Both the position numbers and the translations under genes were made by a program. Shown here piece by piece: positions 19,980-48,809 of a stretch of 64,000 bases of DNA (the first letter of the stretch is position 1; every line of letters begins with the position of its first letter). This stretch comes from Pecten maximus (lineage: Eukaryota): assembly GCF_902652985.1 (NCBI RefSeq), contig NC_047018.1:47616001-47680000 (forward strand). The letters run 5' to 3'. The notes beneath the pieces are model-generated. The model saw only the letters and a program-made list of their open reading frames with translations. It had not been told where the DNA came from and ran no database searches.

Positions 19980-21011
19980 TTTGAAAAAAAATGTGTTAAT
20001 CCTATATTATAAAAAGAGGGGTCCTCCTAAAAACATGAATGGATATGATCAGACCTGAATTAGTTTTAAAGGTATTTTATCGCTTATAAATGTGTTATTT
20101 CTCTGTTTTATGCAAGAAAATATGTTATTACGTATTTTGAAATATCATATTTATTCAAAAAAGTTAATGATATATTTTAAAGATCATTTACTGGGTCGCT
20201 AATCAAACCGACAAACATGACCTAAAAGGGACTTGAATGGGATCGAGTGGACCTGAACGGGAATATTACACAAAATTAATTATAATACATCTATATACCT
20301 GTTCAGATCCATTCCTGTTTTTTGGAGGACCCTAAAAACGGCAATATTATTTAACTTTTCGGGGAACCTTTCTGCTTTGATAGAGAAACACAAGGAGTTT
20401 AATATTTTCCAAATAAAAAAGGAGATGAGCAGGTCGCTGCTATATTTTTTGCAATAATCACCCAATACAAATGAGATATTTATTTTTACAGGTATGAAAG
20501 TTAAAAAATGATTCAGGATTCAGTGTTTCTCATCTGGGATTTCACTCTGGGGATGCCATTATTATAATCCTACAATTTTTTTTAAAGCCTATACACAAAC
20601 TTGAGTTATTACTAAAAAAAATGTAATTAGCATTGAAAAAAAGCTGGGTTTTTAACACTCTTTGAACTACTAATGATAAAATATTTAGCTCACAAGGAAA
20701 ATTTTCATAAAATGTTATTTAAATACTTCATTTTTACTGATAACTTAAGTTACAACTGATGGAAATTTAAAAACCCACAAAGTTCTAAGATATTATTTGG
20801 GTTGAATTTATATTGAATTATGTACTTCTTCAACTTTAGCCTGAATTTCATGCGTCATTAAGATTTATTCCGAGTTTACTCAGGCTATACATGAGATGTT
20901 TGAAAATTTGACAGATGTCTGACCCCAATTCCAGACATCTAGTGTATTCATAAAAAGCTCAATTGCAAGCATTAGATGATTCAAGAAAAATAAATATTGT
21001 AGATAATATAT

Positions 21012-21497
21012 GGATGGTCTAGCTCAGGTGATTCACCTAAGCATTCGGGTAGTTTCCCCAATTTGAATGTGAAAAGGTATATTTGGGGTCACATGCCTCA
21101 CCAAATGGGATTTTTTCGGGCTGGTTCTGTACTCTGGTTTCCTCCCACAAAAGAAAGCCTCCCATGTGCTTATTTCTAGGTCAACAAAAGTGATGACTAT
21201 AAGTTGATATAACTTGTTTCACAATTGTTGTAAAATAAATAAAGTTTAGTATAAGTTGATATAACTTGTTTCACAATTGTTGTAAAATAAATAAAGTTTA
21301 GTATAAGTTGATATAACTTGTTTCACAATTGTTGTAAAATGAATAAAGTTTAATATAAATTGATATAGCTTATTTCACAATTGTTGTAAAATGACTAAAG
21401 TTTAGTATAAATTGATATAGCTTATTTCACAATTGTTGTAAAATGACTAAAGTTTAGTATAAATTGATATAGCTTGTTTTACAATTATTGTAAAAAC
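21012..21497 (+). mobile_element. V-domain-like SINE whose 52-bp 3' tail is tandemly amplified about 6 times
   Basis: Central tactctggtttcctcccac motif; the unit tataagttgatataacttgtttcacaattgttgtaaaataaataaagtttag repeats over 21198-21497. A related copy starts at ~41105. Confidence 0.65.
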
Positions 21498-21665
21498 AAA
21501 TGAACATACAAGGTACTTAAAAATTTGCTTAAACAGCCACTATTTTGGATTTTAACGTTTAGGAATTTGTTATTTCTCCATACTGGTATCCGTGGAAGGA
21601 AATGTTATGTATGAGTCCTGGTTTTGTTTGCCACATTTAGAACTTTGTTTTTGATTTATTTTCAG

Positions 21666-21806
21666 GTCTACAAGGGGTTAGACATCAGCACAAATAAAGT
21701 GACAGCTGAAGAGTTAAGGCAATGTCCCCATCACATGATCGACTTTCTCAGTCCTCTGACCAGGAACTACACCGTCACTGACTATAGAGATGCCACACTA
21801 CCTATT
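21666..21806 (+). CDS. TRIT1: TRIT1 exon 2 (141 nt)
   Basis: ttcag|VYKGLDISTNKVTAEELRQCPHHMIDFLSPLTRNYTVTDYRDATLPI|GTATCCTT. Confidence 0.95.
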
Positions 21807-22563
21807 GTATCCTTTTGTTTGTCTCTTACGGATGGTCCAGTGATGCTGGAAATTAGGGATGCTGGAAATAAGGAATGCTGGAAATTAGGGATGCTGGAAA
21901 TAAGGGATGCTGGGAATTAGGGATGCTGGAAATATGGACTTCAAGGATTTGTGTTAAGCTGCAGTTTCTCAAAATATATAGCTGTTATTCTAACCAAACT
22001 TTAGAATATAACTGGTAGAGAGAATTCAATTCTTTTTATTGAAGTTTGTATTGTAACAGGGGGTATTGTGTTTCATAGAATTTTAAATTCAATGCTAAAA
22101 TCAAAAGGCAATGTCTCTCTTCAAAAGTTGACTGTCCAATACGCAGACATCTTTAAAATATAAAAATATCAAATTTATGAAAATATAAAAATATCAAATT
22201 TAACAAAGAAATTCATAAAATGATGATTCTGTTTCACGGGTACAGATAAGATTTCAAGTACATGTATTTTTAAACAAAACTGATGAAGCCTCGCATATAG
22301 AGGCGAAACCAGTCGACAAATAAATTATAAGTAACCCACTTACCTGGTGACACTTGTCCTTGTTACCTCCCCCCTCTTTATATTTAAACAAGATAGTAAT
22401 GATTAATTTTTAATAAGTTGGTACATGGAGTTATATCTTGTTTCAGATTGACCGACTTGTAATAGAGGGTAAATTTTGTTTTGATAAAATAAATTACCTG
22501 GTTTATTGTATAAATGATTTACTATTAATAAGTTGTGAGTTATATACTTAACTCTTGTGTCAG
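21807..22563 (+). other. TRIT1: U12-type (minor spliceosome) GT-AG intron 2 of TRIT1
   Basis: 5' splice site GTATCCTTT; branch site TACTTAAC ending 11 nt before the exon; no real polypyrimidine tract. Confidence 0.9.
22280..22381 (+). mobile_element. Penelope-like element terminal fragment with a minimal type I hammerhead ribozyme core
   Basis: CTGATGA-A-GCCTC(GCATATA)GAGGC-GAAA-C-CA-GTC followed by AATAAA. A near-identical inverted copy lies at 40630-40740. Confidence 0.75.
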
Positions 22564-22662
22564 ATTGACCGACTCCTGAAGCAGGAAAAGCTCCCAATCA
22601 TTGTTGGAGGCACCAGCTACTACATAGAATCCCTCCTGTGGAACTTCATCGTTACTAAGCAG
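22564..22662 (+). CDS. TRIT1: TRIT1 exon 3 (99 nt)
   Basis: IDRLLKQEKLPIIVGGTSYYIESLLWNFIVTKQ|GTAAAA, containing the conserved IVGGT.YY motif. Confidence 0.95.
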
Positions 22663-23739
22663 GTAAAATACTTCCCTGGTAAAACAGGTAAATTTATTTC
22701 ATTCCACAATTACCGATTATCTTACTTTAAACACCAGTAAATATGTTGAATATAATTGTTTTTTTTGCCACAAACATTCAACATACTGCCTTGATGAAGA
22801 AATTTAACCTCAATTTTTTAGCCCAAAATGTGATGATGGTGGGCTATTAAAATTGTATATTGTCCATGGCCCATGGCCTAGCTAAAATATTACTTCAGAA
22901 GTACAGGAAAGATATTTATCATATTTGATATACGTGCCTGATCAGTTAAAAAAAACAAATAATAAGCCCATCCATATCTATTTCACTTTCGATAAAAATT
23001 GCAATTTTCGTTATCCTGCAATAACCCAACCCCCGTCTTCAGTCAAAGTGTAGGTGTTATACCCGTGGGCTTTCATACCCCTGGGCTTTCTATAGAATAA
23101 AAACGGTTCATTTAACGAAAGTGTGACTGTCGAAGGTGTGGGCCACTTGACCTTTGGTGCCAGATTCGTAACTAACCCTGATAAAAATAGATAAAAATAA
23201 TCACAATGTCCATATTTTTTTAATCACTTGAAAAGCACTCGAGAGCCACTTTGGTTATGGATTGACTGGCGATCTCTACTCCAGTATGTCACAACACTAA
23301 CGTCAGAGCAATACAGAATGAAGTGGCAACAAAAGAATTTCATTGTAGAAATTAACATTTCACAGTATATAAAAATTATGTAATGTTCAGTAACCGGTCA
23401 ATTTTGTCCTGATATGAATATAAATAGTATTTAATCTAATTAACGCACAAATGTTCAAGAGAGGTGTACACGTAAAAGGAATGTAAAAGGAGCGGGTCAT
23501 TGTAGCTTGTATATCGAGTTAAATACGGTCTGTGGCGCTCAGTCGATGGAGCATATTTTGGCTTAGACTGGCCACATGTCTCTAGAATATTAGAATTATA
23601 AATTGAATTGAGCTTTATGATTTTGGTTCACTAGGATTTGTCTGATTCTATGGTCAAACTAGGAGGGGGTAGTCTAGTATTTGAATTTAGTGGAGCAATT
23701 CTGACAAAAAACTTTGACTCAGTAGCATGTTTCTTTGAG

Positions 23740-23822
23740 TCGAGAAGTAGATTTACGGATTATCACCCTGGAGACCTGGGTTCGATTCCAGTCAGTGCAC
23801 TCAACGGGAATGCACTTGTTTT
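23740..23822 (+). mobile_element. tRNA-derived SINE head fragment
   Basis: B box GGTTCGATTCC in ggagacctgggttcgattccagtc; similar to 51957-52040. Confidence 0.5.
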
Positions 23823-25099
23823 TACCCATATAATAATGTCATAATTGAGTTGTAATAGTTGTCGTATCAAATCACTGTTATCTAGTATTAATTATAGTTA
23901 GTAACAGGTACATTCAGTGTGTTAAAACAAGCAATTCATCTTTAAAAAAAATTTCACATTACATACCATAAAGTCTAGAGTGATTTTTGACACAGAGGGT
24001 CAAGGTCATTTCACAGAATCATTGGTAGAGAAATTAACTGGCGCATGTACATACTTTGTACCAGTATCTAACAACATTTTAAAATTTCCATGGTGAAGAT
24101 TACAGGGGTTTTAAATAGAGATCTCCTTTTGACAAAAACCTTAAAACAAAGTGCCTTGAACTACTGTTTTTTCTTGATTAATTGGAATTTAAAAGTTATC
24201 AACAATGAAAAAGCTTTACTGATAAATCATGAGTCTTTCTACCACAAAGAGAGTTTTGATTGTTTTGAAGTTAGCTAACATTGGATGCAAGACGTTCTAG
24301 TTTATTTCACACGGAAGTCCTGTTGCTGTGAAGTCTCCCAGACAGAAACTTTTTTTCCCATCGTGGCCCACCTGAGATTCGTGTATTAGCTGCCTTTGGA
24401 GGTAGTGTAGACCTTGGGGGTCCCAGGCGTTTCTGGCCTCACACCATTAACATTGCACCCAAGGGAGCCCTGCGGTTCTGGTTGACTGGAACCCTCCCTG
24501 GAAGTGGGAAGCACCTGTTTGGAGCTGTTAATGGATTTATGGCCCAATATAGACTCACATGACTGGCACTGATTTCCTACTGAAGTGTCTGCCCTAACCA
24601 CTGGTACAGACACTCTCTCACACTTCCTTTCAGACGGAGTTACCTCCCTTTCCAACATACTCTCCACTTTTCTTCATAGGTATGCCAGAGGGTTTCCAGA
24701 CCCTCATGTCAATGTCAAGGCCGAACTTCAAAGTCAAATGTCAAAATAGTTTTTTAGAGCATTACTGCTTCCTCTCATATATATGAACAATTTCCGGAAA
24801 ATTCTGCGTGTGTATGTTCATTTCCTCAACTAAAAGCCGCAGTTACAAATTAAAGTAAAAGTGATTCTATCAGCGATTTAACATGTATGTTAACACAAAT
24901 CATTTCATGGATTGTTGTCGAAGGTGAGAAGTTAGTTGTTGGCTTGCTATGAAGTTGCTTCAAGAATGTTTCATAGATCCATTTCGCTCCAATCGTCATT
25001 TGTAATGTTTGTTGTAGAATACCATTGAGATCTTTAAAGGTCAGTTAGGTCAGATTTCTTCACTTTTAAATTAGAATGAAAGGGTTGTGTATAAGATAT

Positions 25100-25440
25100 G
25101 TCATAAACCCCTAGACATATTTAGTTCATATTTACATCATAACATCACACCATCAAGGTCTACACCTGTATAGATTTTAGTGGTCATCCGGTAAGGCTAA
25201 AGGTCAAAGGTCACACCACTTTCAAAATAAAACGTTTATCGCACTAGATATCCCATGAACCTCTAGACAGATTTAATTCATATTCACACCATAATGTCGC
25301 ACCATTAAGGTCTACACCAAATAAGATTTTAGTGGACATTGGGCAAGGATAAAGGTCAAAGGTCACTTCTGACCACTCTTAAAATAAAAAGCATGTCTAC
25401 AAGATACCCCGTAAGCTCCTGGACAGATTTATACCTCACC
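25100..25440. repeat. About 2.4 copies of a ~137-bp HINE-type internal repeat carrying AGGTCAAAGGTCA
   Basis: ctagacagatttaattcatatt..aaggtctacacc..gattttagtgg..aaaggtcaaaggtcac is repeated. Confidence 0.6.
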
Positions 25441-25629
25441 TATAGCTCACTGATGTTGATGTCATAGCGTTATCTGAGAATACTACTATTGACCTAAATT
25501 CTAATTCAATCAACTCTCTTTGTTTTTTACTATAATGATGATCATGTCTAGAGTATACAGTTTTCAGTGGATTAAAATAGTCGTTGTACCTAGGTTGGGA
25601 ATGTGGTGCCATAGTCAACTAATTGGTAG

Positions 25630-25935
25630 TTTTGTTTCTTTGCTGGGTTATCTCCCCTTGAACAACCAGGGTCATTTTGAGGCGGGGTCTCCTTGTAGTA
25701 GTTGGTGACTACCTCACCGAAAAACATATGAGAGGTCTGTCATATGCCATCCAGAGCAATTAGGGTAAAGTGTCTTATCAAAGGACACAACCACAATGGC
25801 ATAGACCGGCCTGTTTCTCAGCTTCCTGAGAAACAAACCAACATGGGCAGGGAGCGTCGAACCGCACGTCTCGAATCTTCACCTGAGGTTACGTGGCCCA
25901 GTGCTCTTTAAACTGACTGAGCTATCACGGCCCCC
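25630..25935 (-). mobile_element. Near full-length tRNA-derived CORE-SINE
   Basis: Minus-strand head gggggccgtgatagctcagtc...gcggttcgac and CORE-like gggtaaagtgtctt..caaaggacacaac. A partial second copy lies at 31490-31625. Confidence 0.75.
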
Positions 25936-26566
25936 AGGATTGGGACAGACAGAAGCTAAAGATCCTCGTTTCTATAAATCACAGTACGGCAGACTTGTTG
26001 AGGTGTGAGCTAGTTCCTCCTCCTTGGTCTTGGCCGGTGGCAGGCCTCGGAGAAATTAACCAAATCCTGGTTTCTCTGATGCTTGACTTCCAGAATCGGT
26101 CACCTGTATCACTGCCACCACTGAACTTTTCCTGTCTAGAACTTCAGTGATAGAAAGCATGTGTACTTCCGTTATAAACTTGTTAAATCAACGTTTATAT
26201 TTCATTACGAGTGGAAAAAATATTTCAAAAAAATGCTTTTGTGGGCTGAATATTATGATATATATTTCTTTCTTTTAATAATTTTAATTGTATTTTAAAG
26301 AACTTTTATTTTGATTTTAACTTACGGCTGTTTGTTGGTAGACTAACAAGGCATGTGATGAGAAAGTCACGGGAGAGTCGCCTATTAACGAATCAGCTTG
26401 ATAGTAACCCTATAGTTCTGTAGGTATGCATGCACATGCATGTATTGAGGCCAAGGGGACTCACACTTGAGTTATATGTAGTTTTAAACATGCAGATATT
26501 TTCATTGAATTACGAACTATTGGCCCGCCCATGTGGGTGGTATTTAGCGATTTAGGTAATTGTTTG

Positions 26567-26602
<36 letters not shown>

Positions 26603-40842: not shown

Positions 40843-40961
40843 TGTGCCGGACTACACACATGGGATATTCCAGAGTATCGGCTTCAAGGAATTCCACAAC
40901 TTCCTCATATTGTCAAAGGAGGAGCAAACCACAGACAAAGGGAAGCAACTCTTTAAAGAAG
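40843..40961 (+). CDS. TRIT1: TRIT1 exon 7 (119 nt)
   Basis: aacag|SVPDYTHGIFQSIGFKEFHNFLILSKEEQTTDKGKQLFKE-G|GTAGGA, with the signature GIFQSIGFKEF. Confidence 0.95.
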
Positions 40962-41104
40962 GTAGGACATGGATAGCAGATCATCAGAATCCTTTGTAGT
41001 GTATATTACTGTATTGCGTGGTTCATACAATGTTTACTTTGTGGATCAGTGGAATAATATTATTTCGATATTATGAATTAGTATCACTTGTCAGAAAAAA
41101 AACA

Positions 41105-41732
41105 ACTTTGGGTGGTTGGACGGCACACTAGTAACACATTTTCACCTAAGCGGCCAGGGTTCGATTCCTAGATCAGATGTTGAAAGGTATGGGGGTCACG
41201 AGCCTAACCAAGCATGTATTTTTGGGGTACTCTAGTTTCCTCCCAAAGTAAGACCCTCACACGATTCCACCTACGACAACAAGAGTGATTAATATAAGGC
41301 CATCTTTAAAAATATCTTCATTTGCTGTAACCCGACCAGGGGGTTTTACATATGGGTAGATAGGTAGTGCTGAACTTTTTTTTTATTCACTTCTGAAAAC
41401 CGATTTTCAACCTTCAACACAAAAACAAGCCAGAATATAAACTGTTTGCAAATCATTATTTATTTTGTGATCTTAAACAAAAGAAACACACACCAATCTT
41501 ATTTTGGTTTGCGATACATATTTTCAAACTTGCAAAGCAACTTCTGGGCATAAATATCCGGAATGGTCAAGTCATTCAATTATTTAAAAAAAAGTTTTGT
41601 TTTTCACAATAACATTTTCTGAGTTGGCACATTTTTTCTGAGTTGGGGGGGTCACGCCAAACCAACTATATTTTTATTTTGGCCTAATTTGGTATAACTT
41701 TCATAATTGTTATAAAATAACTAAAGTTTACA
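41105..41732 (+). mobile_element. V-domain-like SINE interrupted by a ~390-bp MITE-like insertion (~41296-41687)
   Basis: B box GGTTCGATTCC and gtactctagtttcctccc; the tail resumes after ggcctaa. Insert ends are taaggcca...tggcctaa. Confidence 0.65.
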
Positions 41733-41912
41733 TTAAAAAAACAACTTGATGCGGCGATGTTGAAGGCTTAAAAATCACCTGTGAATCGTTGTTTTACCCA
41801 GTTTTACAACTTTCACACACTGTTGACAGTTACTTGTATTGACCTGAAATTTGGCGACTGTAACAGATGGAAATATTTCTAAGTATTTAATTGTGCTGGT
41901 TTTGTTTTACAG

Positions 41913-41990
41913 GAGTAGAAAATCTCAAGAAAAGAACGCGCGCCTACGCCAAGTATCAGGTGAAGCACATCCGCAACAGATACATCAGAC
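41913..41990 (+). CDS. TRIT1: TRIT1 exon 8 (78 nt)
   Basis: ttacag|GVENLKKRTRAYAKYQVKHIRNRYIR|GTAGGT, with the TR.YAK.Q motif. Confidence 0.93.
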
Positions 41991-42359
41991 GTAGGTAACA
42001 CAAGAAACTCTCAAAATGTCCTCTTAAAATTGTGAGAATTTTGTGCGGATGAGTTTATACTATGGTGGAGAGTGATAGGGTTGTATAGGGTAACAAATAT
42101 TTGGATATTGAAACTGAATGTTTTTCAGCTGAATCATCTTTACCTCCTGGAAATTAAATATTACAAAAGTTTTCTTCTCTTAATGTTCCCGAGAACCAGA
42201 TATTAATATATGGAAATTTTTGTAATGTTACTGTCAATAAGAATATTTTGCCAGGTTGCTAAAATAATTATATACAGTTGAACAATGCAGGCCCTCTGGA
42301 CATTTTTTGTTAATTTATCTTTTGTGAATTGTAATCCAATACATGTGGCTAATAAACTT

Positions 42360-42749
42360 GTAGTGGTCAATGACTCCAAAGATGTAATAGGAAATTGTTA
42401 TGAAATATTTCTTGTCACTGCTGAGCTTTTAACTAATGACCTTTTACCCTCTGAGCAGACATCCTACCACTTGGCTAAAGGGAAACTTCTGCTAGTCTGA
42501 GTCATAGTAAGGTGACCTATGACCTAGTAAAGTGACCTAGTGAAGTGACCTATGACCTAGTAAGGCGACATATGACCTATTAAAGTGACCTATGACTTAG
42601 TAAAGTGATCTATGACCTAGTACGGTGACCTGTGACCTATTAAAGTGACCTATGACCTAGTAAGCTGACCTATGACCTATTAAATTGACCTATGACCTAG
42701 TAAGGTGACCTATGACCTTGTAAGGTGACCTATACTCCACTCTTTCACA
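42360..42749 (-). mobile_element. Diverged PBS+LTR copy of the miniature LTR element at 59754-60244, with an internal 20-bp tandem expansion (42505-42733)
   Basis: agtggtcaatg, catccta.cact.ggctaaa, gctagtctgag, tagtaaggtgacctat and actc...tttcaca are collinear with 60005-60244. Confidence 0.75.
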
Positions 42750-42763
42750 TATATATTTTCCAG

Positions 42764-42873
42764 GCCGAGGCGCTAACACATTACCTGTATATGGACTGGA
42801 TGTCTCTGATGTCTCTCAATGGGAGGACCGTGTGAAAACACCAGCTGTGGAAGTCCTAACGGATATTTTACAG
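42764..42873 (+). CDS. TRIT1: TRIT1 exon 9 (110 nt)
   Basis: ttccag|RRGANTLPVYGLDVSDVSQWEDRVKTPAVEVLTDILQ|GTAAAA, with the PVYGL.VSD...W motif. Confidence 0.93.
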
Positions 42874-43320
42874 GTAAAATTACAGGCTATAGAGATTCTC
42901 AACAATATTTTACAGGTAAAATTACAGGCTATAGAGATATTCAACAATATTTTACAGGTAAAATTACAGGCTATAGAGATTCTCAACAATATTTTACAGG
43001 TAAAATTAATTACAGGCTATAGAGATTCTCAACAATATTTTACAGGTAAAATTACAGGCTATAGAGATTCTCAACAATATTTTACAGGTAAAATTACAGG
43101 TTATAGAGATTCTCAACAATATTTTACAGGTAAAATTACAGGCTATAGAGATTCTCAACAATATTTCACAGGTAAAAATTACAGGCTATAGGGATTCTCA
43201 ACTACATTTTACAGGTAAAAATTAGAGGGTCATGAGAACAATATTTTACAGGTAAAAATTACAGGGTATTGAGATTCTCAACAATATTTTACTGGTAAAA
43301 TTACAGGGTATTGAGATTCT
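42863..43320 (+). repeat. 42-bp tandem repeat (~10-11 copies) containing the exon 9 splice donor
   Basis: Unit atattttacag|gtaaaattacaggctatagagattctcaaca. Confidence 0.95.
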
Positions 43321-43757
43321 TACTGTTCCTCTAGTGAGCCGACTTATTGACAGATTTTGATTAAACATAACAGGTTTATCTTGGACACATTTAAATACGA
43401 TCAGTCAATGGTCTAGGCCACTGTTACTAAAAATAGAATTGTACCATCACAGCTCACTATCCCATCAAAACGAAACATTTGCTAAGAAAAACGTAAAGAA
43501 ATCCTGCAGTTTATTGATAAAAAAAAATTCTTTCCTCTTGAAGATGTTTTATATTTAATTTCATCAAGGAAAAAAACCAGTTAAAATTCCTCTGGTTTTA
43601 ATAGGTGACATGGTATATTCAGAGAGAATTAAAAGGTTTAAAAAAGGAAAAAAAATCAGAAAATTATTAAAACTAGCAGGGATTCTTTGAAATTTACAGT
43701 TGGTTACCTCCCTTCGCACATGCATTCAATGGGTATGTTTTACTTTTGTTGTTGAAG

Positions 43758-43875
43758 GGGAGAGAACCCCGTCATGCCCCGATCCCTTCAGAAGAGACGG
43801 ATAACTACCTTGTACATGAAGTTTGTGACATCTGTAATGATGGTCGCATGTTCTACACGTCAGACGAATGGAACC
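43758..43875 (+). CDS. TRIT1: TRIT1 exon 10 (118 nt), CxxC half of the matrin-type zinc finger
   Basis: ttgaag|GREPRHAPIPSEETDNYLVHEVCDICNDGRMFYTSDEWN-C|GTAAGT. Confidence 0.9.
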
Positions 43876-43904
43876 GTAAGTATATATTGTAGTTATTATC
43901 TGGG

Positions 43905-44390
43905 ACAAGTTGAATAAAAGATAAAGGAATAAATAGATAAATAAATAAATAAATACAAGTTGAATAATAGATAAAGGAATAAATAAATAAAATAGATAAA
44001 AGTGCAATAATAGATAAAGGAATAATGAAATAAAATAAATACAAGTTGAATAATAGATAAAGGAATAAATAAATAAAATAAATAAAAGTGCAATAATAGA
44101 TAAAGGAATAATGAAATAAAATAGATAAAATAAATACAAGTTGAATAATAGATAAAGGAATAAATAAATAAAATAAATAAAAGTGCAATAATAGATAAAG
44201 GAATAAATAAATAAAATAAATAAAAGTGCAATAATAGATAAAGGAATAAATAAATAAAATAAATACAAGTTGAATAATAGATAAAGGAATAAATAAATAA
44301 AATAGATAAAAGTTGAATAATAGATAAATAAATAAATGAATAAAATAAATACAAGTTGAATAATAGATGAAGGAATAAATAAATATAATA
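43905..44390. repeat. A-rich ~44-bp tandem repeat
   Basis: aataatagataaaggaataaataaataaaataaatacaagttg units; source of the spurious minus-strand ORFs. Confidence 0.9.
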
Positions 44391-45239
44391 GATTAATGAA
44401 AAAATAACTGTTGTAAGGTCATTGTCTAGTCAGATTTCTCTTGGTAAATTGTCGATTTTAGTTCCCTTCCATGAAAGTTATGGTCCTATATATAATTCTC
44501 ACGAAATTGCAGACAAATTGAATGACGTGTGATATGATTAATTTGTCTAATCCTGTGAGATTTACAGGACAATAACTTTCCATAGAAAGCAGTTTAGTAC
44601 TTATATTTCTTGTCCAAATTTAATTTTTTCCTATATCCTACCTGTGACAGTGGCATTTCATTCCAAAGTCAAATTTCACACTTTCAATGGGACCTCTTCT
44701 TGTGATGTCATGAGTACACGTGACTGTTTCTGACAAAAAATTAGTTTGTGGGAGTAAAAACATCATCAATTTGGTTTTATCATCTCAATCATTGAATTCC
44801 ACCTTGAGTATATTCAACTGTTATACAAGCTAGCTACGTAAATTGTTACAAGGTACATTGACCAATCATGTGTTTAATCCAGTTACACAAATTTCTGTGA
44901 TGTTTGAAAATACACTTATATAGAGAATATAGGGGATAATTAGTATTACCTGACCTTCAATATTTATTTTTCACTGTCTTAATATAGCTTGGAAGATTCT
45001 GTGTCATAAGTCACGTGAAACACAAATGTTGGTAAAGGGAGGTAACTCCACAAAAGTAATTAACTTGGTTGATGCATGAGTTATTAAATTTACTTAACAT
45101 TTGATGCATCAGGGACTACTCGCTTCAACAATCTTGATGCAAGGTGCTTCAAATGAATATCGCATCAAGTGGAGAAATTTAATCTTGTTGAAAAAATCAC
45201 TGATCATCATTATAATGGATATCTCTGTCTTTTATCCAG

Positions 45240-45312
45240 GTCATCTCAAAAGTAAAAGGCACGAAAGAAGGAAATATAGACTTAAAAAAGAACAAGCTAA
45301 TTTATTGAAAAG
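45240..45312 (+). CDS. TRIT1: TRIT1 exon 11 (73 nt), HxxxxxH half of the zinc finger plus a basic NLS-like stretch
   Basis: tccag|RHLKSKRHERRKYRLKKEQANLLK-AG|GTATGT. Confidence 0.9.
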
Positions 45313-45845
45313 GTATGTAGCTTTTTTTTAAACAAGTTTTGATTCCACCATTATTAGATGATGTTCAAATCTCTCTTCTTCCCTTCATCCTTATTCATTC
45401 TTAGTTTGTCATCCGTTCATTGTCCATGCAGATGTTACAGGCAGTCATCCTGGATATTGATAAATGAAGGTTGCTTTCACCATTTCTGAAAGTTTATTGT
45501 TCAAGTCTTTTTCCCAAAATTGTATATGTTGATTTTGCTTGGTCCATAGATGTGCATGTTCAATTCTGTGATTGATAGAGAAAAATAACCAACAAGAATT
45601 TGTCCGTTTTGAAATGAGACTGTTGAAGATTGCCTTTGTTTTTTTCTCAGAATGTTTTTGATGTATCTTTCAAGTTTAACATTGCAATAAAACTAAGGCA
45701 TATCAAATTGTTTTGTGCAACTGGGAATGCTTTTTTATATGTATAAAAGTATACACTAATGTACAAGTTGTTTATCTTTTTTGAATAGATTATATTCACA
45801 GCGCATTCACAATAGCTAATATTTGTATATTTATTTTTCGTTCAG

Positions 45846-46185
45846 AACTGAAGCAAAAGAAAAGGCGACCTCTGATGATGCTACGCAAGCCGGTGTAAAG
45901 GGGGATAACTCTCATCTGGAAGACAGTGTCATAGGTGATTTTGAAACAATGGAAGACAATGACATTACATCAGGCAATGTCAGTTTTCACGGTTCACCCA
46001 CAAATGACTGTGAACTGGGAAATGACATTGATACATCAGATAATGTCACCATGTCACATGATGTCAAAGAAGATAATGATGTAAAGGGAAGCAACTCCAC
46101 GATGTCAGGCAGTAATGTCAACGATTCGCCTGATACAAACCATGAAAGGGGAGATAACTCTCCTAAAAACAAGGATGTCAGTTGA
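45846..46185 (+). CDS. TRIT1: TRIT1 terminal exon, acidic low-complexity C-terminal extension
   Basis: ttcag|A is phase-compatible with exon 11 and stays open to TGA at 46185; ATTAAA signals at 46504 and 46514. No family motif here. Confidence 0.75.
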
Positions 46186-48809
46186 AATTGATTTAAAGAA
46201 AATTGTTACAATGAGGATTTAGCTTGATTACAAAACTACAATTTGACCGGTGTTTAAGAAAAAAATAATAAGAAGTGTGTTTTGATTCTGTAGACTGATA
46301 GATAGCAGATAAGCTTTCTGTAACAGAATATTCCTGCGTGGGAAGTTCAGAGCATGGGTATAAACATTCCACTTGTTGTCGACATAATCTAAGTGTCAGA
46401 ATATTTCACAAATTATTATTTGTGGAAGTTGAAACTACCAAGACATTTAAGAACTATTGGTTCTTTGCTTTTTCTAACTCGATTTCTTATCTGTTATTTT
46501 GTGATTAAAGAATATTAAAGAAATATTAACACAATTTTATTGATGGCCTGTTGTTTTCATTTATTTACGCCAATCTCAGGGTACATTGTGTACTAGATTA
46601 GCTATGTCTATGATACTTTCCTGAAGTACAAAATGGACATTTTTCTACGATCTTAAGTGGGAATGATGCATGGGCAAATTTTCCTTTTTTGCCCCAGATT
46701 ATTTGATCATTGTGACAGGGTTGTATCATCTCTACACAGTAAAACCTTCAACCGAAAATATTCCCCAAAAGATAGGATGAATATAGGGATACTAATTCCC
46801 CACAAACTTTAGAAAAGTGATAAATATTCCCCACAAGACAGGCTAGATAGAGATAAAGTCAACGAACAGTGATAATTTTCCGTATAAAATGCATATTAGA
46901 AAAATGAGGTATGATTTTTGACCTCGCTTGGTTTCCTTAAAAAATATGGTAAAGAGAAAAGAAAACATCTAAGTTCTTTCTTGGGATCTCCGCTTTTTAT
47001 TGGTATAAATCCTTTTTACACCAAGAGCTTTTCGTTTTTGACTTTGAGTGGTTTATTTACCAAAAGCGTTAAGAAATTTCACCCCGTTTTCTGCAGTTTT
47101 TTTTACCGACGTTTTCCCAACAAAAACTGAGTGGTTCTGTGCAATCTGGAACTAGCTATTATAAAATTTATATGACTATAAAATACAGAAATCACTTGTT
47201 CCGTTGATATCAACTTTTTATTTCTAAGATGCATATAAAGGGCATTGTGATGCGTTTGAAATTAAAGATTACGTTATAAAAGTCATATCGTACCGATGCG
47301 AACGTGAAGGTGTTAAGAGAGATACCTTGGTATTATACATCCCCATTCAACCAAAGAAGAACATTTTCCCCCACAAGAATTTGTATATGCTGGGAAAGAG
47401 AATGCATTTAGCTGGGTAAAAATTGCCTCCTCAATTGCTGGTTTGGTATTCACAGACTCAGAAGGAAGGATTTTGCACCACTTCTTCCCCACCGCGCCTG
47501 CGCAGCTCCCCCCCCCCCCCCCCCCCCCCAAAAAAAAGCCCCCACCCGTCTTAATTTTGTTTTTGTGTTTTTTGTGTCCCACATTCCGAACATCAAATCA
47601 TGGAATTGGAATTTCATAAGCAACATTTGATTATTTTTTTTTTCGACTGAATAGATTCGTGAAGATATGGATAATTCTATATGTTCCTTAAAAGATCAGA
47701 TATTATTATGAGGGGAAATGTGGTCCTGACACCCTCAGAATGAAGCATTTTCAGCATTTCTTCATAAGGATGTACACTTTTGTATGCTTATAAATGTTAG
47801 CCCAGACGTTCACATTCAGTGTTGACGTTACCGACTCAAGTATTGCTAGTGTGACGTCATTCAGTTGGTATGATTACAAAATTCCCCGTCCCTCCCCTTT
47901 GAGGTGCCATTTAACTATGTTAAGATTTGTTTATATCAAATCTTTGAATTTTTATATAAATAAAAAAAAAATCCTATATGAAAAAAAAAACAACAAAAAA
48001 ACAAAAAAACAATTGAAAAGATCAAATTTTCGTTATCAAAAAATTGTGAATATGTAGTAAAACGGCGCTTTACGCCCTAGTCCGAATTTTCTGACGATCT
48101 CGCTGTAGGCCTATATACTTTTAAAGTCAACATCGGAACTCTTCGGATTACATACTCCCCTGACGTACAAAAATAGTAGACAAGTATGTAGAATAGTTAT
48201 CGATTGTCAAAACAATGTACATACTCTCCGGAAAATATCTGTTTCAGGTTTTTTGTTCTGATAATTTTTCTTTTGTAAATATAATCTAGATTTCGAGATA
48301 TACTAGATTAAAATGCTCTATATAAAAAAACAAAAAAACAAAACAAAAACAAAACAAACAAACAAATAAACAAACAAACAACAACAAACGCTATTTCTCG
48401 TTAAGTAGACTAGATTACCTATCTTCCGCTTCCATCCGGTCAGACAAAAGTGAATCGTTATATTTTGTTTAACACTTTTAGACTTCGAAGAAAAGTTGGT
48501 CAATTAAGATTTCAATTAAAGTCTTTTCAAGTGAGCTCCAAGGTTGTTTTCCTTTTTCTTTTCACAAAATACATGTAGCTCTATACGAAAATTGTATACC
48601 TAAAACATAAAACATGGCCCGATTAATATCCCATTAATATATTTTAAGCGAAAGTTTTGCACATTTTCATTGTTTTTACATGCAACAATATCAAAATGAT
48701 GAACCTCTCAGCTTGTTTTTCATCCCTCAGATAGTATATGCTTTTTTGGAATATGTTGTGTATACATTATGAAAAATAGAATATTGTTTATGAAGAATTA
48801 AACAGCATC

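What the first reader, a model, noticed from the sequence alone, without database searches (positions are those of the whole stretch)
22361..46160. A 14-bp motif (AAGGGRRRYAACTC) concentrated in the TRIT1 gene body on both strands, including protein-coding sequence
Seen, close matches: 24637-24650 (-), 25645-25659 (-), 32594-32607, 36569-36582, 40938-40951 (exon 7), 43701-43714 (-), 45035-45048, and three in the last exon (45898, 46084, 46147, read as KGDNS/KGSNS/RGDNS). Weaker matches occur near 22361, 27750 and 31477. Flanks are unrelated, so this is not a dispersed transposon, and by eye I found no full match outside the gene. In two repeat pairs only one copy carries it (SINE 25645 vs ~31500; Penelope fragment 22361 vs ~40640), which suggests it arises de novo in place. 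Inference: a binding site for an unknown factor that marks transcribed or methylated gene bodies strongly enough to shape amino-acid sequence in a weakly constrained tail.
Basis: partly seen in the sequence, partly recalled or inferred. Interest (0 to 1): 0.8.

Follow-up and report, generated by a model that had tools for sequence, protein, structure and literature searches.

The report
Genome-wide dispersed 18-base scallop motif
The short DNA word seen in the scallop TRIT1 gene is real, but it belongs to the whole genome: a strictly spaced 14-18-base motif present tens of thousands of times, largely in single-copy DNA, which looks like the docking site of an unknown sequence-specific factor.

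Summary
The motif is real. AAGGGRRRYAACTC has 5 exact and 3 one-mismatch copies in the window (0.00 and 0.31 expected), all inside the TRIT1/IPPT gene. It is not TRIT1-specific. The 918-Mb assembly holds 14,395 exact copies against 87 for the reversed control, equally on both strands. With one mismatch allowed the count is 46,960 against 3,611.

The motif is bipartite, with strict 4-nt spacing, a purine/pyrimidine-only centre and a 3' extension (AACTC-Y-N-A-Y). The 18-mer occurs 4,234 times against 2. Flanks are unrelated. About 40% of copies ride in at least 9 different repeats (LINEs, a satellite, other elements). The rest look unique, and 5 of 5 tested contexts are single-copy.

The "de novo" repeat pairs do not hold up, and matches with 2 or more mismatches are at chance level. 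The three tail-exon copies sit in an in-frame internally repetitive exon, so they are probably not independent. A cluster of this size is expected about twice per genome by chance. The gene-body/methylation link is untested: TRIT1 is CpG-depleted, but other hit loci show only a non-significant trend.

Best reading (about 0.4): a recognition site for an abundant sequence-specific DNA-binding factor, partly spread by mobile elements. Neither the literature nor this scan's earlier notes describe it.

The parts
21624..46185 (+). tRNA isopentenyltransferase (TRIT1/IPPT-family) gene body, which holds all motif copies of the window
   Evidence: Pfam IPPT PF01715 on exon ORFs 21624-21800 (E 1.6e-12) and 22555-22650 (E 1.1e-6). 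Spliced RNA contigs give exons ..40959|41911-41990|42764-42871|43756-43875|45240-45310|45844-end with GT..AG introns.
20001..48000 (.). CpG-depleted domain (CpG o/e 0.23-0.56) coinciding with the gene; flanks are 0.83-1.17
   Evidence: This is a proxy for germline methylation of the gene body; methylation itself was not measured.
24637..24650 (-). Exact motif copy (AAGGGAGGTAACTC), intronic, antisense to the gene
   Evidence: The +/-100 bp context is single-copy in the genome.
32594..32607 (+). One-mismatch copy (last C>G), intronic
36569..36582 (+). One-mismatch copy of the common AGGGG variant, intronic
   Evidence: The AGGGG+RRRY+AACTC variant is frequent genome-wide.
40938..40951 (+). Exact copy inside coding exon 7; read as (D)-K-G-K-Q-L in the true frame
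45035..45048 (+). Exact copy, intronic (intron 43876-45239), in a 28-bp island identical between two 93%-identical haplotypes, with dense substitutions on both sides
45898..45911 (+). Exact copy in the last coding exon (KGDNS)
   Evidence: Identical in haplotig C138.
46084..46097 (+). Exact copy in the last coding exon (KGSNS)
   Evidence: Lies 186 nt from the previous copy, within an in-frame repetitive exon.
46147..46160 (+). One-mismatch (AGGGG) copy in the last coding exon (RGDNS)
   Evidence: Lies 63 nt from the previous copy.
25645..25658 (-). Two-mismatch match inside a SINE; chance-level and not counted as part of the phenomenon
43701..43714 (-). Two-mismatch match; chance-level

Best explanation
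The window shows a local cluster of a genome-wide cis-element. It is an asymmetric motif of about 18 bp, AAGGG-(V V R Y)-AACTC-(Y N A Y), that serves as the recognition site of an abundant sequence-specific DNA-binding factor. The length and three-block layout suit a multi-zinc-finger or transposase-derived helix-turn-helix protein, but that is inference. Copies were spread partly by mobile elements and satellites that carry the site. Thousands of free-standing copies in single-copy DNA are kept, or were created, because the site is used.

Shown: the over-representation, the architecture, the strand symmetry, the unique contexts and the multiple unrelated carriers. Inferred: that a protein binds it, that it acts on double-stranded DNA, and that selection keeps it. 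The TRIT1 cluster is an ordinary dense patch of this element. Its three tail-exon copies are multiplied by in-frame internal duplication of a low-complexity coding tail.
For: - Counts: 14,395 exact copies against 87 for the reversed pattern (base composition predicts about 75). 46,960 against 3,611 with one mismatch allowed.
- Spacing is strict. The N4 spacer gives 24,802 matches against 1,180. The N5 spacer gives 6,009, and these are mostly the AGGGG variant of the N4 motif.
- The centre is constrained by base class only. RRRY is 6% of possible centres but 58% of matches, and all 16 RRRY variants occur.
- The 3' block Y-N-A-Y is present in 29% of copies (about 8% expected). The 18-mer occurs 4,234 times against 2.
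- Forward and reverse counts are equal, 7,113 and 7,282.
- Flank conservation stops at -1 and +5, and 26 of 36 contexts are singletons. 5 of 5 tested contexts are single-copy genome-wide.
- Carriers are unrelated to one another and hold the motif in either orientation: a LINE RT ORF and 3' region, another LINE's 3' UTR, a 146-160 bp satellite, a 1,745-bp tandem repeat and a dispersed element of more than 500 bp.
- All 4 copies are identical between two haplotypes that differ at about 10% of other positions. None of the variants listed from 4 public runs falls in a copy.
Against: - There is no occupancy, accessibility or cross-species data, so binding is inferred from sequence statistics alone.
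- The haplotype test is weak: 45% of all 14-mers are also unchanged, giving p of about 0.04 at the 14-mer level.
- No candidate factor and no known matching motif was identified, and no paper holds the sequence.
- Maintaining thousands of sites of about 24 bits by selection is demanding, so a generating mechanism cannot be excluded.
- The association with gene bodies or any chromatin feature is unproven.
Confidence: 0.4

Rival explanations
1. Relics of mobile DNA without host function. The motif is a module used by mobile elements themselves (a promoter, packaging or enzyme-recognition site) and shared by many LINE, satellite and other families. The 'unique' copies are what is left of very old insertions.
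For: About 40 of the 100 copies listed fall into at least 9 recognisable repeat families. LINEs carry 2-3 copies each. A satellite monomer carries one. Two LINE families have the same 14-mer at the same place in the RT but shifted by 2 nt.
Against: Neutral decay cannot leave a perfect 14-18-mer while erasing all flanking similarity. 5 of 5 tested contexts are single-copy. The motif occurs in either orientation and at different positions in the carriers. There is no inverted partner, adjacent inverted repeat or secondary word as expected for termini or subTIRs. Copies also occur in coding exons of a housekeeping gene.
Confidence: 0.2
2. An RNA-level element. The motif acts in transcripts, either as a site for an RNA-binding protein or as the pairing partner of a small guide RNA. 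The R/Y-only centre would reflect G-U wobble with one fixed guide.
For: 7 of 8 copies in TRIT1 are on the sense strand. Four are in the mature mRNA. Three sense copies cluster in a LINE 3' UTR. Centre degeneracy is purine-for-purine and pyrimidine-for-pyrimidine, and A2>G is the commonest mismatch.
Against: Other LINEs carry it antisense. Centres with C at positions 6-7 are also enriched, which wobble cannot explain. Other positions that wobble would free (A10, A11, C12, C14) appear fixed in the small sample. 7 of 8 is not significant. No Rfam family overlaps.
Confidence: 0.15
3. A motif-generating mutational process. Copies are written into DNA by insertion of a pre-formed oligonucleotide (for example abortive, extremely 5'-truncated reverse transcription of an element's 3' end) or by short-tract biased conversion.
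For: Conservation ends sharply at the 3' side after Y-N-A-Y. There are thousands of copies in unique DNA. Copies occur in exons, introns and repeats alike.
Against: There is no graded upstream conservation as 5' truncation would give, and no target-site duplications are visible. All 16 centre variants are common, which does not fit one master template. No copy is an indel between the two haplotypes. The two supposed de novo cases fail.
Confidence: 0.1
4. Chance or compositional artefact, or an assembly artefact.
For: The motif was defined post hoc by eye, and the TRIT1 cluster itself is within what a genome of this size yields by chance.
Against: The excess is 165-fold over the reversed control and over the base-composition expectation. 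There were 0 of 100 shuffles with any exact match. The same half-sites at 5-nt spacing are far less enriched. Independent RNA and DNA runs and a second haplotype contain the copies.
Confidence: 0.01

Closest known systems
Insulator/architectural-protein motifs spread partly by mobile elements (vertebrate CTCF sites in SINE B2; Drosophila Su(Hw) sites in gypsy)
   Same: An asymmetric motif of about 12-20 bp, 10^4-10^5 copies, on both strands, part in repeats and part free-standing, with degenerate inner positions.
   Different: The sequence does not resemble the CTCF or Su(Hw) consensus as I recall them (memory, not tested). No binding, boundary or loop data exist. The enrichment over chance (about 100-fold even for unique contexts) is unusually high.
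CENP-B box (17-bp site of a transposase-derived protein inside satellite monomers)
   Same: A short, strictly defined box occurs once per monomer in a 146-160 bp satellite. A transposase-derived binder is plausible.
   Different: Most copies here are outside satellites, in single-copy DNA, introns and exons. No centromere link is known.
C. elegans Ruby motif (upstream element of about 15,000 piRNA units)
   Same: About 10^4 dispersed copies of a short motif on both strands, including in introns.
   Different: No conserved feature at a fixed distance downstream or upstream within +/-150 bp. Copies are spread over the genome and not seen here as large clusters. No small-RNA evidence.
Helentron/HINE (DINE-1-like) subterminal inverted repeats, 12-15 bp and nearly identical between unrelated families (PMC4067079)
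   Same: A 12-15-bp word shared by otherwise unrelated sequences. The elements carry central tandem repeats and are known in molluscs.
   Different: The predicted inverted partner, adjacent short inverted repeat or hairpin and boundaries are absent around the free-standing copies. 5 of 5 contexts are single-copy.
Bacterial over-represented oligomers (DNA uptake sequences, REP, Chi)
   Same: A short oligomer is far above chance and dispersed through coding and non-coding DNA, which forces particular peptides when it lies in genes.
   Different: This is a different domain of life and mechanism. It serves only as an analogy for how a DNA-level word can appear inside coding sequence.

Membership tests
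Copies of one dispersed transposon family | Flanks of the copies are homologous to each other | tested here: not met
   The logo of 36 contexts shows no conservation beyond -1 and +5. 5 of 5 contexts are single-copy genome-wide. At least 9 different carrier families appear.
Helentron/HINE subTIR | Second copy in inverted orientation within the element, and a short inverted repeat or hairpin next to it | tested here: not met
   Most 3-kb loci hold a single copy even at up to 2 mismatches. Inverted half-words occur at background frequency in +/-150 bp: CCCTT 8 against 7.6, GAGTT 12 against 12.8.
Extremely 5'-truncated retroposon tails | Sharp 3' boundary, graded conservation upstream, target-site duplications | tested here: not met
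   The 3' boundary is sharp. There is no graded upstream conservation, no visible duplications, and all 16 centre variants are common.
Sequence-specific DNA-binding-factor site (insulator/TF type) | Over-representation with fixed spacing and position-specific degeneracy, on both strands | tested here: met
Sequence-specific DNA-binding-factor site (insulator/TF type) | Sites evolve more slowly than their flanks | tested here: inconclusive
   0 of 56 motif positions differ between two haplotypes against about 10% elsewhere. The 14-mer-level test gives p of about 0.04 with only 4 sites.
Sequence-specific DNA-binding-factor site (insulator/TF type) | Occupied by a protein in chromatin (footprint, ChIP or DAP signal) | not testable with these tools
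   No accessibility or binding data could be reached.
   The TRIT1 body is CpG-depleted and holds all window copies. The 22 hit loci against 30 control pieces give median CpG o/e 0.55 against 0.75, Mann-Whitney p = 0.105.
Upstream motif of small-RNA units (Ruby-like) | Conserved initiator or transcript start at a fixed distance | tested here: not met
   No positional signal or enriched secondary word in +/-150 bp.
Any curated RNA family | Match to an Rfam covariance model | tested here: not met
   0 matches at gathering score in the window, L001, L019 and L010.

The most novel reading that the evidence does not exclude
The 18-bp element is the site of a lineage-specific architectural or genome-defence protein that organises scallop (perhaps bivalve) chromatin at more than 10^4 positions. 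Alternatively, the genome actively writes this word into DNA. Either would be an undescribed system in a phylum without a known high-copy cis-element of this kind.
Probability: 0.2. Interest if true: 0.85.

Novelty: new member of a known kind. Interest (0 to 1): 0.55.

Why it matters
Molluscs have almost no characterised genome-wide cis-elements. A strictly spaced 18-bp word, about 100-fold above chance even in single-copy DNA, points to an abundant sequence-specific factor. That factor could be identified directly by pull-down or DAP-seq with the 18-mer and tested against existing scallop ATAC-seq, Hi-C and methylome data. It would also show how mobile elements and satellites distribute such sites in a spiralian genome. 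For TRIT1 itself nothing special follows.

Tried and rejected
I stopped that step and built the logo from stored loci only. The roughly 40/60 split into repeat families and singletons is a tally by eye.
As a result 32594, 36569 and 40938 could not be compared between haplotypes, and the CpG test could not be enlarged.
- Cross-species comparison: the tail-exon peptide alone found no relatives.
- Helentron subTIR idea from PMC4067079: rejected.
- Spliced-leader or snRNA-like reading of the L001 satellite (a GT plus an Sm-like AUUUUGG nearby): no Rfam support and not pursued. A remembered resemblance to U1 snRNA and to a 5' splice site in the reverse complement (GTAAGAG...) was treated only as an unverified lead.
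- G-U wobble/guide-RNA model: not supported by centres containing C or by the small mismatch spectrum.
- Protein-level origin (the KGDNS peptide, or the LINE RT 'GxxPxxWK' block on the other strand): explains a few carriers only. Most contexts have stops in all frames.
- Literature searches and the scan's own notes found nothing on this motif.
Full report
OBSERVATION. The pattern AAGGGRRRYAACTC has 5 exact matches in the 64-kb window: 24637-, 40938+, 45035+, 45898+ and 46084+. None of 100 dinucleotide-preserving shuffles gave any exact match. With one mismatch allowed there are 8 matches, adding 32594+, 36569+ and 46147+, against 0.31 expected. With two mismatches there are 10 against 4.3 +/- 2.1 expected. 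All matches lie between 24.6 and 46.2 kb. The window has no N.

THE GENE. Exon ORFs at 21624-21800 and 22555-22650 hit Pfam IPPT. Spliced RNA contigs from public runs give exons ..40959 | 41911-41990 | 42764-42871 | 43756-43875 | 45240-45310 | 45844-end, all with GT..AG introns.
- The copy at 40938 lies in a coding exon. In the true frame it reads D-K-G-K-Q-L, and that frame continues into exon 8 as GVENLKKRTRAYAKYQ.
- The copies at 45898, 46084 and 46147 lie in the last coding exon and read KGDNS, KGSNS and RGDNS.
- The copies at 24637, 32594, 36569 and 45035 are intronic.

THE MOTIF BELONGS TO THE GENOME, NOT TO TRIT1. The assembly (918,306,378 bases in 3,983 contigs; the window is C4:47,616,001-47,680,000) holds 7,113 + 7,282 = 14,395 exact copies. 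The pattern read backwards gives 87, and base composition predicts about 75. With one mismatch allowed the count is 46,960 against 3,611. The mean density is 15.7 exact copies per Mb. The gene, with 5 copies in 24.6 kb, has about 13 times that. The Poisson probability of 5 or more in one such bin is about 5e-5, so about two such bins are expected per genome by chance.

The three tail-exon copies are probably not independent. That exon is full of short direct repeats whose spacings are multiples of three, and the motif copies themselves are 186 and 63 nt apart. This is the pattern of an internally duplicated low-complexity coding tail.

ANATOMY.
- Replacing the centre by NNNN gives 24,802 matches against 1,180. 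RRRY is 16 of the 256 possible centres but 58% of these matches, and most of the rest are V-V-R-Y.
- A 5-nt spacer gives only 6,009 against 1,176, and most of those are the AGGGG variant of the 4-nt motif. The spacing is therefore strict.
- A logo from 36 distinct contexts shows conservation only at -1 (A or C) and for five bases after AACTC (Y-N-A-Y-A). Beyond that the flanks are random.
- Genome-wide, 29% of exact copies carry Y-N-A-Y (about 8% expected). The 18-mer occurs 4,234 times against 2 for its control.
- All 16 RRRY centres occur, at ratios near 1:1 to 3:1 per position. The centre is thus constrained to base class only, while the two 5-nt blocks are fixed.
- The motif is not palindromic.

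WHERE THE COPIES SIT. By eye, about 40 of the 100 flanked copies listed fall into at least 9 groups with shared flanks. The rest are singletons. Identified carriers are:
- A non-LTR retrotransposon with one copy antisense inside its RT ORF. There the reverse complement encodes G-V-I-P-L of the 'GxxPxxWK' block. A second copy lies in its 3' region.
- Another LINE with three sense copies in 750 bp of 3' UTR.
- A third LINE RT that has the same 14-mer shifted by 2 nt relative to the protein alignment.
- A 146-160 bp satellite with one copy per monomer.
- A 1,745-bp tandem repeat.
- A dispersed element of more than 500 bp with an internal copy.
In contrast, all five contexts tested by genome-wide search are single-copy: two from the window and three arbitrary ones. 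Among 41 distinct stored hits, 27 have no repeat match in the stored 420 kb.

The SINE at 25645 belongs to a family with at least 1,522 candidate copies. In 20 other copies the consensus at that spot is TTCAYGGGGCGATAAACCC, which is already motif-like and CpG-rich. The window copy is one variant among many and still has two mismatches. The Penelope-like pair differs by a 7-bp indel, and the resulting word has four mismatches. Neither case supports creation in place.

CONSTRAINT. Contig C138 is a 93%-identical second copy of 44.4-46.5 kb. RNA and DNA contigs of other individuals carry its variants, so it is an alternative haplotype. All four motif copies in this stretch are identical in the two haplotypes: 0 of 56 positions differ, against about 10% elsewhere. 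At 45035 the motif lies in a 28-bp invariant island flanked by dense substitutions. However, 45% of all 14-mers are also unchanged, so the 14-mer-level probability is only about 0.04. None of the variants listed from four runs falls inside a copy, but 82 further variants were not shown. This evidence is suggestive only.

GENE BODIES AND METHYLATION. CpG o/e is 0.23-0.56 across 20-48 kb and 0.83-1.17 outside, so the gene looks germline-methylated. For 22 hit loci elsewhere against 30 control pieces the medians are 0.55 and 0.75 (p = 0.105). Near-matches in ten control stretches show no relation to CpG o/e. The question stays open.

ALTERNATIVES TESTED.
- One transposon family: excluded by the unrelated flanks and single-copy contexts described above.
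- Helentron/HINE subterminal inverted repeats are 12-15 bp and can be nearly identical between unrelated families (PMC4067079). I found no inverted partner within +/-1.5 kb, and inverted half-words and secondary 6-mers are at background frequency.
- Truncated retroposon tails: there is no graded upstream conservation.
- Ruby-like promoter: there is no fixed-distance feature.
- Rfam: nothing.
- Guide-RNA wobble: weakened by centres that contain C and by the small mismatch spectrum.
- Literature and the scan's earlier notes: no record of the motif. The only paper holding one of the 14-mers is an unrelated primer hit.

VERDICT. The best-supported reading is a recognition site for an abundant sequence-specific DNA-binding factor, partly spread by mobile elements (confidence about 0.4). 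Binding, selection and any link to gene bodies are inferences. TRIT1 is not special, the de novo cases fail, and the coding copies are explained by an in-frame repetitive tail plus one chance overlap with an exon.

LIMITS. 

Noticed in passing
window 44372-46480 vs L071 (G000:C138:16900-19000): An unplaced 24.9-kb contig is a 93%-identical second copy of the TRIT1 3' end. RNA and DNA contigs from other individuals carry its variants (for example 45987 T>C, 45989 A>G, 46168-9 AA>TC). Two deeply diverged haplotypes therefore segregate here.
   Followed up: partly
L039:6833-8269 (+) and L004 around 1501 (-): Two different LINE families have the same 14-mer (GAGTTATCYCCCTT) at the conserved 'GxxPxxWK' block of the RT, but shifted by 2 nt relative to the gap-free protein alignment (G-V-I-P-L against S-Y-L-P-Y). 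This is either a compensated frameshift or independent acquisition of the DNA word.
   Followed up: partly
window 20001-48000: CpG o/e steps sharply from about 0.9-1.2 to 0.23-0.56 exactly over the TRIT1 gene body. This is a textbook mosaic-methylation signature.
   Followed up: partly
window 45844-46185: The last coding exon is a low-complexity Asp/Asn/Ser-rich tail built from many short in-frame direct repeats (spacings 18, 33, 51, 54, 63, 66, 72 and 186 nt). It has no detectable relatives by word search.
   Followed up: partly
L001:1302-1806: A 146-160 bp tandem repeat (3.3 units) sits inside a larger repeat. Each unit holds one motif copy followed by GGTAAGG and ATGATTTTGG, which looks like a splice donor plus an Sm site. 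There is no Rfam match.
   Followed up: partly
L010-L012 (G000:C1:933914, 935659, 937404): A tandem repeat with a 1,745-bp period, each unit carrying one identical motif copy. More copies of the same unit lie at C1:9.42 Mb and 17.30 Mb.
   Followed up: no
run X10: A run labelled as DNA of a second organism gives spliced contigs across three TRIT1 introns, so it is RNA-derived. It is about 95% identical in the last exon.
   Followed up: no
window 25480-25760 and 31440-31740: Two copies of a SINE-like family with at least 1,500 genomic candidates. The conserved core is ...GTAGTCACCAACTACTACAAGGAGACCCCGCCTCAAAATGACCCTGG..., ending in an (AAAC)n-like tail.
   Followed up: partly
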